A stretch of DNA of 64,000 nt from assembly GCF_006345805.1 (NCBI RefSeq), contig NC_043003.1, positions 106,454,001-106,518,000 on the forward strand. Direction: 5' to 3'. Below are positions 16,372 to 22,441 of the stretch, piece after piece. A program made the position numbers and the translations under genes. Origin of the DNA: Octopus sinensis (lineage: Eukaryota). Numbering within the stretch: the first letter of the stretch is position 1; each line of letters opens with the position of its first letter. The notes beneath the pieces were generated by a model. The model did not search any database. It saw only the letters and a program-made list of their open reading frames with translations, and had not been told where the DNA came from.

Positions 16372-16406
<35 letters not shown>

Positions 16407-16450
16407 TATATATATATATTTGTATATATATATATATATATATATTTGTG

Positions 16451-16503
<53 letters not shown>

Positions 16504-16590
16504 ATATATATATATAGATTTGTATATATATATATATATATTATTATATATATATATATTATTATATATATATATATATAATATATTTGT

Positions 16591-16625
<35 letters not shown>

Positions 16626-16660
16626 TTGTATATATATATATTGTATATATATATATTTTG

Positions 16661-16729
<69 letters not shown>

Positions 16730-16833
16730 ATATATATATCTATATATTTGTATATATATATATATATATATTTGTATGTATATATATATATTCGTGTATA
16801 TATATATATATATTTGTATGTATATATATATTC

Positions 16834-16878
<45 letters not shown>

Positions 16879-16880
16879 AT

Positions 16881-16920
<40 letters not shown>
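13395..16920. repeat. Very long interrupted (TA)n microsatellite/satellite
   Basis: ~3.5 kb of TA repeats punctuated by TTTGTG, TAGA, TGTA and TGGT. The 'IYIY' ORFs in the track are artefacts of this repeat. Confidence 0.97.
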
Positions 16921-16922
<2 letters not shown>

Positions 16923-17107
16923 ATTATTTGTGTGTGCGTTTGTGTGTATATAAATAAATCTCTAGCCAAACTGTTAGTTGAGAAAATATTCAAAATCGTT
17001 GCCAATGCATTTTATGCATAAAAAAAGAAAATAATAATAATAATAATAAACTTCGACAAGGCAACAGGAGCCGCGTCATTTTTTTTTGGGTGTTTTTGTT
17101 TGCTTTG

Positions 17108-17285: not shown

Positions 17286-17363
17286 TTACAGAAGCTGACA
17301 TTTGGTTCTTGGTTTCCTAGGAGGTTGTGGTTGCAAAACTGCTCTGACTGCTTCTTCAAACAC
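17286..17363 (-). CDS. Mtl: Mig-2-like Rho GTPase, last coding exon (VFEEAVRAVLQPQPPRKPRTKCQLL*)
   Basis: Acceptor TTTTTGTAG, polybasic tail, CAAX box CQLL (geranylgeranylation type) and TAA stop at 17288-17286. Total protein is 195 aa. Confidence 0.95.
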   Translation of the reverse strand: MFEEAVRAVLQPQPPRKPRTKCQLL

Positions 17364-17480
17364 CTACAAAAAAACAAAAAAACAATGTTTGACACTGGTT
17401 TTAATAATTTCCCTTTGGGACACCACCCCAAGGCCACTAATTATGCTGGTGAGAAAACAGTCAATTATATTAATGGTGCT

Positions 17481-17862
17481 TGGTGCTGGTGCCAAATAAA
17501 AAGCACCCGGGGTACTCAGAAAGAATGATGGGGAGATAGAGAATGAAAGAGGGAGAGAACAAGAGAGAAAAGAAAGGAAGAGAAAAGAGAGTAAGAGGGA
17601 AAGAGAGAGAGAGAGAGCAAGGAGAGAGAAAAGAGGAGATAGAAAATGCAGAGACTAGCAAAAGGGAAATGTTTTTCTCTTTATTGAAAAGAGTCTCCAA
17701 AAGTGATTAACCTGCTTGAGTCCCCTCTGCGTAAAGTGGTTGACAATAGGAAGGGCATCCAGCTGTAGAAATCAAGCCAAAGTGACAATGGAACTTGGTG
17801 TAGCTCCTGTCAAACCATCCAACCCATGCCAGCATGGAAAACGGATGACAAATGATGATGAT
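17481..17862 (+). mobile_element. RTE-type 3'-end repeat (family C), interrupted by a copy of the Mtl exon-4/intron-4 junction
   Basis: Left piece TAAAAAGCACCC; right piece AAAGTGGTTG...AGGAAGGGCATCCAGCTGTAG to the (GAT)n tail. Insert at 17517-17734. Confidence 0.75.
17517..17734 (-). repeat. Local duplicate of 22115-22303 (last 23 nt of Mtl exon 4, its donor and proximal intron)
   Basis: CTGCTTGAGTCCCCTCTGCGTAA and the adjacent AG-rich intron match 22281-22303 and 22115-22280. Confidence 0.92.
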
Positions 17863-18551
17863 TAGGATTGTGATGATGGTCAGTACTTGAATGGTGTTTG
17901 TTTGAAGGATAAAAGGCCAAGTTGACTTCAGCCTCCAGTACCAGAACTAAATATTGCTCCCAATATAATCTTACGATTGCCACATCCACCCCAGCTCTAC
18001 TCACCTGGGACATCTCTTCTATCCATCGCTCCTATTAATCATTCTATCTCTTCCCTACAGAGAGTAACCATGCAGCTCTTCCACAAGAACCTGTTCTGCC
18101 CTATCCCTTTCTCTCATGCTTTAACCCCTCATCCCCTAACATAAAGCTAACCCCCAGCCCCCCACCAGGGTTTAGAGTCTTGGGAACTGCATGGTGACCT
18201 CAATAGTGTTGGTGGCATGAAAAACAAAAAGGAGACAGGTTTGCTACAGCTGGATGCCTTTCCCGTTGCCAATCTGCACCGTTTTGCAAGCAAGGTAATA
18301 TTTCATGAAAAATTGAAAATAAACAACCTCATTTGTATGATAATGATTCTCATTTACACCCACCATGTGATGTCTAGACATGGTACGCACACACACACAC
18401 ACACACAAATATGATGGGCTTCTTTCAGTTTCCATATGCCAAATCCACTCACAAAGCATTGGTTGGTTCAGGGCGATAGTAGAAGACACTTATCCAAGGC
18501 ACTACACAGTGGGACTGATCTCAAGACCACATGCTTGGGAAGCAAGCTTCT

Positions 18552-18751: not shown

Positions 18752-20131
18752 TTATTTCTCTTTTTACGTTTACAGCACTAGGTTTCCCAAGCAGTCACCC
18801 ATCTAAGTACTAGACTCGACGTTGCTTAACTTTGGTGATTGGACGAGAACCGGTGCTTTCAACATGATATGGCCTTAGGTAAGTCTCTTAATCACACAAT
18901 TACTTCTTCCCCTGAATAGAAATATTTAATTCTAAATGTCGTCTGCAGCATGTCAGATCAGTTGGAGAAAGATTGAGGTCTGTCCTAAAGAGAAATCTCT
19001 ACTACACAACGCTAGAACTAAGTACCGGCATTCATAGAAATTGCTGGAAACTAGAAGAAATTCATTGCTTATACTATAGTGTACTCTTCACTGCAGCCAT
19101 CTGACTTTGGTTTGGCCAGCTTCACATGACTGGTTTGCTTCACAGATCAAAGCGTTGGTTGATGGTTGATACCGACATATTTGTAACTTGAGTTTCAATA
19201 TGTTGCATACAATAAGCAGCATGCGAAAACAGCTGCAGAGGAGACAAATGTCAGGTCATTGTGTACCACAGACAAGATGACACAGGAATGAAAAGAATGG
19301 CAATATGCCGTGCTGCAAACCTGACCCAGCCCAAGCTAGAATAGCGAAGTGGAGGCTAAAAATAGACAAAGAAAAAAAAACAACAAAACTGTTTCAACTG
19401 ATAACAGTGGAAAGCAGAGTGAATATAGATAGAAACATTAACCGTTTCATGTAATTCAATTGATTTTAAAATAGTTACGAGTTTTGAACAACCAAAGTAA
19501 GCAATGTATGTCGTTGACAGCAAGACACCTGTACCTGCCCCTCTATCACATTTTAATTATCAACACCTGGCATAAAGTCACTTCCATCAATACTACTCCC
19601 CTTTTCAGTTGAGGGCCCTTGTCTCGCAGGTTACTTGGTGACCTCACTAGTGTTGGTGCTATATGAAAAGCACCTGGTATACTGTGTAAGGTGGTTGGTG
19701 TCAAGAAGGGCATACAGCTGTGGAAAGCCCAACCAAAGTAGACATTGGAACTTGGTGCAGCAGTCCTCTTGTTTACCAGCATGGAAAATAGTCATGAAAT
19801 GATGGAATTGAAAAAGTTTTTGGAACATTATTTTAAGTAGCTTTTAAGTTGTGATGGAAAACTTCAATTGATACATAACAGGGATTGACAAACAAACATC
19901 TCTTCAGTATTTAACCCAACAACCAGCCTCTTATATTCACCTCAAATCCAAAAACCATTTTTATTTTCCTCATTTGCAACAACAAATGCAACAGCTCAAA
20001 TGTCATAATTTTCAACTTGTTTCAATGTTTTGTCTAAAAATTTATAGGAAAATAAAAATAACATAACCGTGTGTCATTAAAGTTTTGTCCTTGCCCCATT
20101 GAATATTTTTTTTGTTCATCATCAAAACAGG

Positions 20132-20715: not shown

Positions 20716-20900
20716 CCTGTGCCAGTGGCACGTAAAAAGCACCCACTACACTCACGGAGTGGTTGGTGTTAGGAAGGGCATCCAGCTGTAGAAACACTGC
20801 CAGATCAGACTGGAGCCTGGTGCAGCCTCCCGGCTTCCCAGACCCCAGTCGAACCGTCCAACCCGTGCTAGCGCGGAAAACGGACGATGATGATGATGAT
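20716..20900 (+). mobile_element. RTE-type 3'-end repeat (family C), young copy
   Basis: Ends in (GAT)n and retains CpGs. Confidence 0.8.
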
Positions 20901-21624
20901 TGGCTTAACTTTTACTTGACCCCTTAAGAAATTACACAACACTGACTTAGAAAGAAGACACATTAGATAACATAATCCAAGATAAACATTCATCGTTATC
21001 ATCATCATCATCATCATTGCTTTAATGTCCCCTTTTCCATGCTCACAAGGGCCAGATGTAATTAGGTGGGATGGATTTTCTATGGTTGGATGCCTTTCCT
21101 GTCACCAAACCTCACACGTTTCCAATTAAATAGTATTTTCCCCTGATCAGGCATGTTTTTTTATGGAAGACTGGAAATGAAGGACACCCTGTGCATAACG
21201 ATAGCATTTACTAACAATTATCACATGATAGGTGTTAGCAAGTGACACACACACACACAACGGGCTTCTTTCAGTTTCTGCCAACCAAATCTACTCAAGG
21301 TTTTGGTCAGCCTGGTGCTATGCAAAAAACACTTGGCAAAGGTACCATGCAGTGAGATCGAACCTGAAACCATATGACTGGGAATGAAACTTCTTACCAC
21401 ATGGCCACACCTATCTAAGAGAAAATCCAAGTCAAAAACTGGTTAAAACTGGAATGTTTTTGATCAGAGTTAAGCTGCCATTAAGCAAGTTTTCATGATA
21501 AACAACAGCAGATTGGATGGAGAAAGAGGAAAACTAAAAGAACACAAATGGTCAACATTTTTGTTTTCCTATAAATTTTTGGACAATTCCACCTAAAAAA
21601 CACCTTCTGAGCATGGTCGTTGCC

Positions 21625-21835
21625 AGAACTACCTGACTGGCCCTCGTACCGGTGGCACGTAAAAAGCACCCACTACACTCATGGAGTGGTTGGCATTAGG
21701 AAGAGCATCCAGCTGTAGAAACTTTGCCTGATCAGACTGGAGCCTGGTGAAGCCTTCTGGCTCACCAGTCGTCAGTAAAACCATCCAACCCATGCCAGCA
21801 AGGAAAGCAGATGATGATGTTGATGTTTAAAGTAT
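21625..21835 (+). mobile_element. RTE-type 3'-end repeat (family C)
   Basis: GGTGGCACGTAAAAAGCACCC ... CCATGCCAGCA ... (GAT)n. Confidence 0.75.
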
Positions 21836-22280
21836 TTTTGTTGCTGTTGTTGTTAATGGGGGAAAGTAAAAATGGTTTTGGCTTTGAGGATGGAATAAGG
21901 TGAGGACCGTTCAGTTGAAAACTTGATTTTTTTTTTGTTTCTTGAAATGCTATCAGCACAAATAAGTGGAAGTGGTTCACTATGTTTATGTTCTGGAAGA
22001 TGAGAGATGATGGAGAGGAAGAGAGAAAAGGGTTTACAAGGAGGAAGAGTAGGAGGATAGATAAGTGGAGAAAGTGAAAAAGAAAGTAGAAAAAAAAAAC
22101 TGGAAGGAGAGAAACAGAAAGAATGATGGGGAGATAGAAAATGAGAGAGGGAGAGAAGAGAGAAAAGAGAGCAAGGAGGAGAGAGATTAAGAGAGAGGAA
22201 AGAGGAAATAGAAAATGCAGAGACTAGCAAAAGGGAAATGTTTTTCTCTTTATTGAAAAGGGTCTCCAAAAGTGACTAAC

Positions 22281-22441
22281 CTGCTTGAGTCCCCTCTGCG
22301 TAAGTGCTGAACACTCCATGTATTTCACAGCCCGGACCTTGTTAGCCATCTTGATTCCCTGTTCCCTTTTAATCGGAGATAAACCCTGTGAAGCTAGAGT
22401 ACCTATTGCTTCTTTATTCTCCCGTAAATCTATTTTTGTAC
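22281..22441 (-). CDS. Mtl: Mig-2-like Rho GTPase, coding exon 4 (TKIDLRENKEAIGTLASQGLSPIKREQGIKMANKVRAVKYMECSALTQRGLKQ)
   Basis: Not in the ORF track; translated manually. Contains G4 TKID, the Rho insert and G5 ECSAL. Acceptor TTTTTGTAG, donor GTTAGT. 161 nt; phase 1 in, phase 0 out. Confidence 0.96.

What the first reader, a model, noticed from the sequence alone, without database searches (positions are those of the whole stretch)
17712..17762. Potential new in-frame 51-nt cassette exon built from a repeat acceptor plus a duplicated donor
Seen on the minus strand: the antisense RTE 3'-end repeat supplies ...GGCTTGATTTCTACAG| and the duplicated exon-4 end supplies |GTTAAT. The 51 nt between them read CTG GAT GCC CTT CCT ATT GTC AAC CAC TTT ACG CAG AGG GGA CTC AAG CAG = LDALPIVNHFTQRGLKQ, phase 0/0 with no stop, ~350 nt before the last exon. 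Inclusion would give ...ECSALTQRGLKQ-LDALPIVNHF-TQRGLKQ-VFEEAV..., restoring the start of the C-terminal helix after a 17-aa insertion next to the G5 motif. This is conceptually like the Rac1b insert and like Alu exonisation. Whether it is spliced is inference; the donor is weaker than the original GTTAGT.
Basis: partly seen in the sequence, partly recalled or inferred. Interest (0 to 1): 0.7.

Follow-up and report, generated by a model that had tools for sequence, protein, structure and literature searches.

The report
Octopus Rac-gene intron pseudo-exon from pasted duplication
In the last intron of an octopus Rac/Mtl-type GTPase gene, a 214-base copy of the previous exon-intron boundary was pasted into an old antisense repeat, which produces a 51-base in-frame stretch that looks like an exon but has no evidence of being spliced.

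Summary
On the minus strand, 17762-17712 is 51 nt, stop-free and phase 0/0. It is preceded by tttctacag and followed by gttaat.

The window is Octopus sinensis. The gene is a 195-aa, five-exon Rac/Mtl-like GTPase.

The donor side belongs to a ~214-nt copy of the exon-4 end (19-23 nt) plus the start of intron 4. That copy sits inside an older, antisense SINE-like retroposon 4.6 kb downstream of its source. O. vulgaris carries the same insertion. O. bimaculoides has the same repeat copy uninterrupted, so it preserves the empty site. The junctions show 4 nt of microhomology (TTAC), a 2-nt loss, no target-site duplication and no tail, which points to a templated insertion made during break repair.

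Nothing shows that the stretch is spliced:
- No protein with the insert exists in a 15-billion-sequence collection.
- The donor lost its +5 G.
- 23 pseudo-exons in the same intron have crude splice signals at least as good.
- O. sinensis and O. vulgaris are too close for conservation to be informative.

Most likely this is a silent, or at most noisily used, pseudo-exon that could be raw material for a new exon. RNA-seq junction reads would decide.

The parts
17712..17762 (-). Candidate 51-nt in-frame pseudo-exon (LDALPIVNHFTQRGLKQ). The first 28-32 nt come from the repeat and the last 19-23 nt are copied from exon 4.
17763..17790 (-). Acceptor-like region from the antisense repeat (cattgtcactttggcttgatttctacag|). 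Pyrimidine fraction is 0.72. A possible branch A lies at -21 (tgtcAct, judged by eye).
17706..17711 (-). Donor-like GTTAAT, a copy of the exon-4 donor GTTAGT with G>A at +5. The change is shared by O. sinensis and O. vulgaris.
17517..17734 (-). Inserted duplicate of the exon-4 3' end plus the start of intron 4. It is 214 nt, or 218 nt counting the TTAC shared with the target. It contains a CT-rich microsatellite of variable length.
22115..22303 (-). Source segment: the last 23 nt of exon 4, the authentic donor CAG|GTTAGT, and about 165 nt of intron 4.
17735..17875 (+). 3' part of the interrupted SINE-like retroposon copy. The element's sense strand is the window + strand, and the part ends in an (ATG)n-type tail. 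It is antisense to the gene.
17475..17516 (+). 5' part of the same retroposon copy on the other side of the insertion (...GGTGCCAAATAAAAAGCACCCGGGGTACT). In O. bimaculoides it is contiguous with the 3' part.
22281..22441 (-). Exon 4 of the Rac/Mtl-like GTPase gene (…TKIDLRENKE…ECSALTQRGLKQ).
17286..17363 (-). Exon 5, the last coding exon (VFEEAVRAVLQPQPPRKPRTKCQLL plus stop).

Best explanation
This is a lineage-specific structural mutation, not a demonstrated exon.

An old SINE-like retroposon copy already lay antisense in intron 4 of the Rac/Mtl-like GTPase gene. In the common ancestor of Octopus sinensis and O. vulgaris, after the split from O. bimaculoides, a DNA break arose inside that copy. 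The break was repaired by copying about 200 nt from the exon-4/intron-4 boundary 4.6 kb upstream on the same strand. The copying was primed on the 4-nt microhomology TTAC and then re-joined with loss of 2 nt. This is a templated insertion of the microhomology-mediated end-joining or template-switching type.

By accident, the copied donor now sits 51 nt downstream of the AG that every antisense copy of this repeat family carries, which gives an in-frame pseudo-exon.

Shown: the insertion, its direction (an insertion, not a deletion), its junctions and its distribution among species.

Inferred: the repair mechanism, and that the pseudo-exon is skipped or included only at noise level. The reasons for the second inference are that its donor lost the +5 G, its acceptor is weaker than three of the gene's four real acceptors (exon 2's scores lower), and no product containing it is on record.
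For: Identity of the locus:
- The window is 100% identical to the O. sinensis locus L002.
- The gene has five coding exons and encodes exactly the 195-aa protein P0006.

The insertion:
- The copy (17734-17622) matches the source (22303-22191) at 96%, and the match continues through a CT-rich tract to 17517 / 22115.
- O. vulgaris L001 has the same insertion, with an identical 51 nt and identical splice-site contexts.
- O. bimaculoides L003 aligns to both flanks at about 91%, with only 2 nt where the 214 nt sit (...AACCACTTTACA|AAGTATTC...). That uninterrupted sequence is collinear with other members of the repeat family, so the event is an insertion and not a deletion.
- The junctions show TTAC shared by target and source, no target-site duplication and no A-rich or repeat tail.
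- Two independent assemblies from two species carry it, which excludes misassembly.

Splice signals:
- Predicted pairing with the U1 snRNA 5' end is -6.9 kcal/mol for the copied donor and -9.5 for the original.
- The acceptor pyrimidine fraction is 0.72, against 0.67-0.94 for the real acceptors.
- 23 pseudo-exons in intron 4, and 80 across all four introns, have both crude signals at least as good.

No product on record:
- No protein with the insert appears among the hits.
- The exact 212-aa isoform is absent from the collection, while the 195-aa form is present from three Octopus species' annotations.
Against: - The negative expression evidence is weak. The protein collection shows the 195-aa protein only on four NCBI genome contigs, so it may hold few or no octopus transcript assemblies. 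I could not search any RNA-seq data.
- The crude donor measure does not separate real from false sites well: the real exon-1 donor scores -7.0, the same as the candidate.
- Unlike ordinary pseudo-exons, this one carries 23 nt of genuine exon end and about 190 nt of the genuine downstream intron. Any splicing enhancers there were copied too.
- A plausible branch site (tgtcAct at -21) exists upstream of the acceptor.
- Only one junction shows microhomology, and 214 nt is long for a polymerase-theta type templated insertion. The exact repair pathway is therefore open, including whether the template was DNA or nascent pre-mRNA.
Confidence: 0.72

Rival explanations
1. It is a real, alternatively spliced cassette exon specific to the O. 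vulgaris/O. sinensis lineage. It would give a 212-aa Rac/Mtl isoform with a 17-residue loop between the G5 motif (SAL) and helix alpha-5.
For: - Reading frame and phase are preserved.
- The donor is a near-copy of a working donor together with its exon end and its downstream intron context.
- The acceptor has YAG, 72% pyrimidines and a possible branch site.
- The candidate donor's predicted U1 pairing equals that of the gene's real exon-1 donor.
- An AlphaFold2 model of the 212-aa product keeps the GTPase fold. It loops out residues 163-180 (pLDDT below 50) and builds helix 182-197 from the second TQRGLKQ copy.
Against: - No protein with the insert is found in any search. Only the 195-aa product is listed for the three Octopus species' annotations.
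- The donor lost the +5 G while already having T at +3.
- Equally good pseudo-exons are common in these introns.
- The two species that share it differ by only about 0.4% here, so the identical sequence says nothing about selection.
- The structure model is poor (mean pLDDT 64).
- The antisense-repeat consensus peptide matches no predicted protein, so there is no sign that this family is commonly exonised in this frame.
Confidence: 0.12
2. The insert matters not as an exon but as a splicing regulator of the last intron. The duplicated donor and CT-rich tract could act as a decoy 5' splice site, or as an extra binding platform for polypyrimidine-tract binding proteins. Either could change the efficiency or timing of exon 4-exon 5 splicing.
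For: - The copy carries a U1-complementary site and a long CT-rich tract only 150-350 nt upstream of the exon-5 acceptor.
- It has been kept in two species.
Against: - This is pure inference.
- Retention in two species that are about 0.4% diverged is expected under neutrality.
- The CT tract changes length freely between the copies and between the species.
- O. bimaculoides and the octopod of L004 splice the same exons without the insert and make the identical protein.
Confidence: 0.08
3. The duplication is an assembly artefact, or the fragment was carried in by retrotransposition (template switching of the repeat's reverse transcriptase, or LINE-mediated insertion of a pre-mRNA fragment).
For: - The insert lies inside a retroposon.
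- It has the same orientation as the gene transcript.
- It contains unspliced sequence, as nascent RNA would.
Against: - The artefact is excluded by its presence in two independent assemblies of two species.
- Template switching during the repeat's own insertion is excluded, because O. bimaculoides has the same repeat copy at the same site, complete and uninterrupted.
- LINE-mediated insertion is not supported, because there is no target-site duplication and no tail.
- Capture of an RNA-templated fragment at a break cannot be excluded. It is a sub-variant of the best explanation.
Confidence: 0.05

Closest known systems
Exonisation of antisense SINEs (the Alu exon model in primates)
   Same: An antisense SINE-like element in an intron provides a pyrimidine stretch plus AG that could serve as a 3' splice site. 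The feature is lineage-specific.
   Different: In Alu exons both splice sites usually arise within the element, and inclusion in mRNA has been shown. Here the donor comes from a pasted copy of the upstream exon's own donor, and inclusion has not been shown.
Rac1b (in-frame 57-nt exon 3b of human RAC1)
   Same: A small in-frame cassette in a Rac-type GTPase that would add a surface loop without breaking the fold.
   Different: From general knowledge, the Rac1b insert lies directly after switch II (after residue 75), is conserved and is expressed. This candidate lies between G5 and helix alpha-5 (after residue 170 of 195), is found in two sister species only, and is unproven.
Templated insertions at repaired double-strand breaks (microhomology-mediated end joining, template switching / MMBIR, human 'templated sequence insertion polymorphisms')
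   Same: A short stretch copied from elsewhere on the same chromosome is inserted at a break. There is microhomology at a junction, a small deletion at the target, no target-site duplication and no tail.
   Different: At 214 nt it is longer than typical polymerase-theta insertions. Only one junction shows microhomology. The pathway is inferred from the scars alone.
Intronic pseudo-exons
   Same: An AG...GT pair of moderate strength deep in an intron, one of many (23 in this intron by crude score).
   Different: Part of it is a true exon end with its native downstream intron, so it starts closer to a functional exon than a random pseudo-exon does.
Tandem exon duplication giving alternative or mutually exclusive exons
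   Same: Exon sequence is duplicated within the same gene, in the same orientation and frame.
   Different: Only the last 19-23 nt of the 161-nt exon were copied, without its acceptor. The copy is dispersed (4.6 kb away, inside a repeat), not tandem.

Membership tests
Transposable-element exonisation (Alu-type) | A splice site is provided by the element's own sequence | tested here: met
   TTTCTACAG|CTGGATGC is the reverse complement of GCATCCAGCTGTAGAAA, which is kept in 10 of 12 family copies. The element is antisense to the gene, with its (ATG)n tail on the + strand.
Transposable-element exonisation (Alu-type) | The element-derived segment is included in mature mRNA | not testable with these tools
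   No RNA-seq or transcript database was available. Indirectly, no protein with the insert was found.
Rac1b-type splice insert | The insert lies immediately after switch II of the GTPase | tested here: not met
   The insert would lie between ...ECSALTQRGLKQ and VFEEAV..., at the exon 4/5 junction after residue 170 of 195.
Templated insertion by break repair | An empty site in a related genome, with the inserted sequence matching a template elsewhere | tested here: met
   O. bimaculoides L003 28833|28836 is uninterrupted. The template lies 4.6 kb upstream on the same strand.
Templated insertion by break repair | Microhomology at the junctions, with no target-site duplication or tail | tested here: inconclusive
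   TTAC (4 nt) is shared at the upstream junction. There is none at the downstream junction, where 2 nt of the target are lost. There is no target-site duplication and no tail.
LINE-mediated retroposition of an RNA fragment | Target-site duplication and a 3' tail (poly-A or microsatellite) | tested here: not met
   Neither is present at the junctions.
Tandem exon duplication | The whole exon is duplicated with both of its splice sites | tested here: not met
   Only 23 of the 161 exon nucleotides are duplicated.
   The window has no reading frame of 175 aa or longer and no LINE. Only the short-tandem-repeat tail and the ~170-250-nt unit were seen. Octopus genomes are reported to be 11.6% SINE (PMC13282606).
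Rac subfamily of Rho GTPases (host gene) | Full-length similarity to Rac/Mtl proteins and the Ras-family domain | tested here: met
   The protein is 195 aa. Identity is 73-83% to molluscan, annelid and arthropod Rac proteins when computed against the 212-aa query, which includes the 17-aa insert, and 78-91% in the alignment. The hits include one named 'rac family small GTPase Mtl'. Pfam PF00071 is recorded on the hits.

The most novel reading that the evidence does not exclude
A new protein-coding exon caught at birth. A break-repair insertion pasted a working donor (with its exon end and intron context) behind the latent acceptor of an antisense SINE. The result would be a 17-residue loop insertion next to the nucleotide-base-binding G5 motif of a Rac/Mtl GTPase, present only in the O. 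vulgaris/O. sinensis lineage and used in some tissue such as the nervous system.
Probability: 0.1. Interest if true: 0.6.

Novelty: new member of a known kind. Interest (0 to 1): 0.25.

Why it matters
If the stretch is silent, it is an ordinary neutral structural variant, and its value is mainly as a clean, datable example. It has an empty site in a sister species and shows how break repair can move a functional splice donor next to a repeat-borne acceptor.

If it is spliced, it would document a hybrid route to a new exon (partial exon duplication plus SINE acceptor). It would also create a lineage-specific isoform of a conserved Rho-family GTPase with a loop beside the guanine-binding G5 motif, which could alter nucleotide handling.

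Either way, the finding changes nothing established about Rac biology until transcript evidence exists.

Tried and rejected
1. Search for the isoform as a protein. I tried the full-length 212-aa query, an exact look-up and a 61-aa junction query. None returned a sequence with the insert. The two short hits with extra residues at this position (P0122, P0124) are read-through gene calls across the homologous intron in unrelated animals, not this insert.

2. Search for exonised copies of the repeat family, using a 42-aa antisense-consensus peptide. No candidates were found.

3. The idea that the fragment was picked up by template switching during retroposition of the repeat. I rejected this because the repeat copy is intact at the same site in O. 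bimaculoides.

4. The idea that O. bimaculoides lost the segment by deletion. I rejected this because its uninterrupted sequence is collinear with other family members.

5. Verifying the 'RTE' label. The window has no LINE reading frame, so the label is left unverified.

6. Crude splice-site ranking, by predicted U1 pairing energy and pyrimidine fraction. It does not discriminate well: a real donor scores the same as the candidate. I use it only to show that the candidate is not exceptional.

7. AlphaFold2 model of the 212-aa product. Confidence is low (mean pLDDT 64, from 40 sequences), so I use it only as a weak plausibility check.

8. The +5 G>A as a sign of selection against the donor. It is one of two shared copy-specific changes in about 106 clean nucleotides. 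That is roughly a 1-in-6 chance of hitting the 9-nt donor, which is not significant.

Full report
**What is in the sequence**

Read on the minus strand, 17762-17712 is CTGGATGCCCTTCCTATTGTCAACCACTTTACGCAGAGGGGACTCAAGCAG. It is 51 nt and translates without a stop to LDALPIVNHFTQRGLKQ. It is preceded by ...ggcttgatttctacag and followed by gttaat. The true exon-4 end at 22281 reads ...ACGCAGAGGGGACTCAAGCAG|gttagt. Exon 5 begins at 17363 behind a long T-rich tract.

**The gene**

A tblastn search with human RAC1 (typed from general knowledge), followed by reading the exon borders, gives five coding exons on the minus strand:

| Exon | Window coordinates (minus strand) |
|---|---|
| 1 | 53087-52972 |
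| 2 | 39977-39863 |
| 3 | 25256-25139 |
| 4 | 22441-22281 |
| 5 | 17363-17286 |

Spliced, they encode a 195-aa protein. That protein is, residue for residue, P0006, named 'ras-related C3 botulinum toxin substrate 2-like', which is a Rac-family GTPase annotated in three Octopus species. Related hits include proteins named Mtl. The exon 4/5 junction is phase 0 and lies between ...SALTQRGLKQ and VFEEAV..., that is, between the G5 motif and the C-terminal helix.

**Source organism and related loci**

The protein is encoded on four public genome contigs.
- The window is 100% identical to the O. sinensis locus L002.
- L001 is O. vulgaris.
- L003 is O. bimaculoides.
- L004 is a further octopod assembly that I could not name.

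**What the duplicated piece really is**

The similarity between the copy and the source starts at TTACGCAG... It runs through the donor and about 190 nt of intron, including a CT-rich microsatellite that differs in length between copies. It ends at ...CCCATCATTCTTTCTG (17517 in the copy, 22115 in the source).

Beyond that point the copy continues with AGTACCCCGGGTGCTTTTTATTTGGCACC. This is the continuation of the same repeat element that supplies the acceptor. The duplicated piece is therefore an insertion inside a repeat copy, and not a piece that merely abuts one.

The comparison across species settles this.
- O. vulgaris has the same insertion, 15 nt shorter in the CT tract, with an identical 51 nt and identical splice-site contexts.
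- O. bimaculoides aligns at about 91% to both flanks and has only two bases where the 214 nt sit...CCAACCACTTTACA|AAGTATTCTGGGTGC....
- That uninterrupted sequence is collinear with other members of the family, so the ancestral state is 'empty'.

The insertion arose on the O. vulgaris/O. sinensis lineage after its split from O. bimaculoides. That split is dated to 13.3-33.5 million years ago in PMC13282606, citing Huang et al. 2022. Two independent assemblies of two species carry the insert, so it is not an assembly error.

**The repeat**

About 13 copies lie in the 64-kb window, in both orientations, and are roughly 70% alike. Each has a unit of about 170-250 nt ending in an (ATG)n-type tail. 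For the copy in question the element's sense strand is the window + strand, so it is antisense to the gene.

The motif GCATCCAGCTGTAGAAA, whose reverse complement is the acceptor TTTCTACAG|CTGGATGC, is kept in 10 of 12 aligned copies. Every antisense copy therefore brings the same latent acceptor. By the orientation of the hits, eight such copies lie in this gene's introns.

I could not confirm that the family is an RTE 3' end, because the window holds no LINE reading frame. 'SINE-like retroposon' is the safer label. SINEs are reported to make up 11.6% of the O. vulgaris genome (PMC13282606).

**How the insertion arose (inferred)**

- The target reads ...CACTTTAC|AA|AGTA... and the source reads ...GCACTTAC|GCAG... 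TTAC is common to both at the upstream junction.
- At the downstream junction there is no shared sequence, and two target bases are missing.
- There is no target-site duplication and no tail.
- The template lies 4.6 kb away on the same strand.

This is the scar pattern of a templated insertion made while repairing a break: a broken end primes on a microhomology, copies a stretch, and is then re-joined. Whether the template was DNA or the nascent unspliced transcript cannot be told from the sequence. Retroposition-linked mechanisms are excluded or unsupported, because the repeat pre-existed intact and there is no target-site duplication or tail.

**Is the 51-nt stretch an exon?**

Points in favour:
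- Frame and phase are preserved.
- The donor comes with 23 nt of true exon end and its native downstream intron.
- The acceptor is YAG with 72% pyrimidines, and a possible branch site (tgtcAct) lies at -21.
- The candidate donor's predicted pairing with the U1 snRNA 5' end (-6.9 kcal/mol) equals that of the real exon-1 donor (-7.0).

Points against:
- The copied donor has G>A at +5 on top of the unusual T at +3. Predicted U1 pairing drops from -9.5 to -6.9 kcal/mol.
- By these crude measures, 27 of 307 GT sites and 19 of 272 AG sites in intron 4 are at least as good. They combine into 23 equally good pseudo-exons in intron 4 and 80 across the four introns. Three of those in intron 4 are in frame and stop-free.
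- No protein carrying the insert exists among 7,933 scored relatives, in a junction-focused search (the top hits were checked), or as an exact sequence among about 15 billion proteins. The 195-aa form is there, with accessions from the Octopus annotations.
- An antisense-repeat consensus peptide finds nothing, so there is no sign that this family is commonly exonised in this frame.

Conservation cannot help. O. sinensis and O. vulgaris differ by two substitutions and one indel in about 500 nt here.

The +5 change is one of only two substitutions shared by both species' copies in about 106 cleanly aligned bases. That is suggestive of, but not significant for, selection against the donor.

The negative protein evidence is weak, because the collection shows this gene only on genome contigs and no read-level RNA data could be searched.

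**Consequence if included**

The product would read ...ECSALTQRGLKQ-LDALPIVNHF-TQRGLKQ-VFEEAV... An AlphaFold2 model of the 212-aa product gave these results:
- It was built on a 40-sequence alignment and has mean pLDDT 64, so it is weak.
- It keeps the GTPase fold.
- It leaves residues 163-180 as a low-confidence loop.

This shows only that the idea is not structurally absurd.

**Comparison with known things**

The stretch resembles Alu-type exonisation in that an antisense SINE provides the acceptor. It differs in that the donor is imported and inclusion is unproven. It is not like Rac1b in position, because (from general knowledge) the Rac1b insert follows switch II. It is not a tandem exon duplication, because only 23 of 161 exon bases were copied. 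The insertion itself fits the class of templated insertions at repaired breaks.

**Verdict**

The best reading is a neutral, lineage-specific templated insertion that created a pseudo-exon (confidence about 0.7). A real minor isoform remains possible (about 0.1). It is a new example of known kinds of events and of modest interest until junction reads are examined.

Noticed in passing
window 22275-22280 (-); L001, L003, L004 orthologous sites: The authentic exon-4 donor is atypical, with a pyrimidine at +3. It reads CAG|GTTAGT in O. sinensis, O. vulgaris and O. bimaculoides, and CAG|GTCAGA in the unnamed octopod of L004.
   Followed up: partly
window 22115-22260 and 17517-17690 (-); L001 33990-34230: The CT-rich microsatellite just downstream of the exon-4 donor changes length freely. 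The source is about 185 nt in O. sinensis and clearly longer in O. vulgaris (244 nt of L001 align to the copy). The copies are 214 and 199 nt, and the O. bimaculoides assembly has an N gap there.
   Followed up: partly
L004 15140-15250: The short intron 4 (575 nt) of the fourth octopod also contains an antisense copy of the same repeat family, with ttctatag|ctggatgg. It could be the orthologue of the target element, which would make that copy very old.
   Followed up: no
P0122, P0124: Metagenome gene calls from unrelated animals read straight through a short intron at the same GLKQ|VFDEA position. The phase-0 intron position therefore appears widely conserved in Rac/Mtl genes, and such read-throughs mimic inserts.
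   Followed up: no
window 17427-17654 (-) and 19326-19355 (-): Two other in-frame, stop-free AG...GT pseudo-exons in intron 4 have crude signals at least as good as the candidate. One of them lies inside the duplicated CT-rich tract.
   Followed up: no
window 16500-16980: There is a long (TA)n-rich, low-complexity array just downstream of the gene's 3' end. It generates a spurious 169-aa ORF at 16373-16882.
   Followed up: no
window 20719-20901 and 21646-21828: Two antisense copies of the same repeat family lie 927 nt apart in intron 4 and are 84% alike. That is closer to each other than the family average of about 70%.
   Followed up: no
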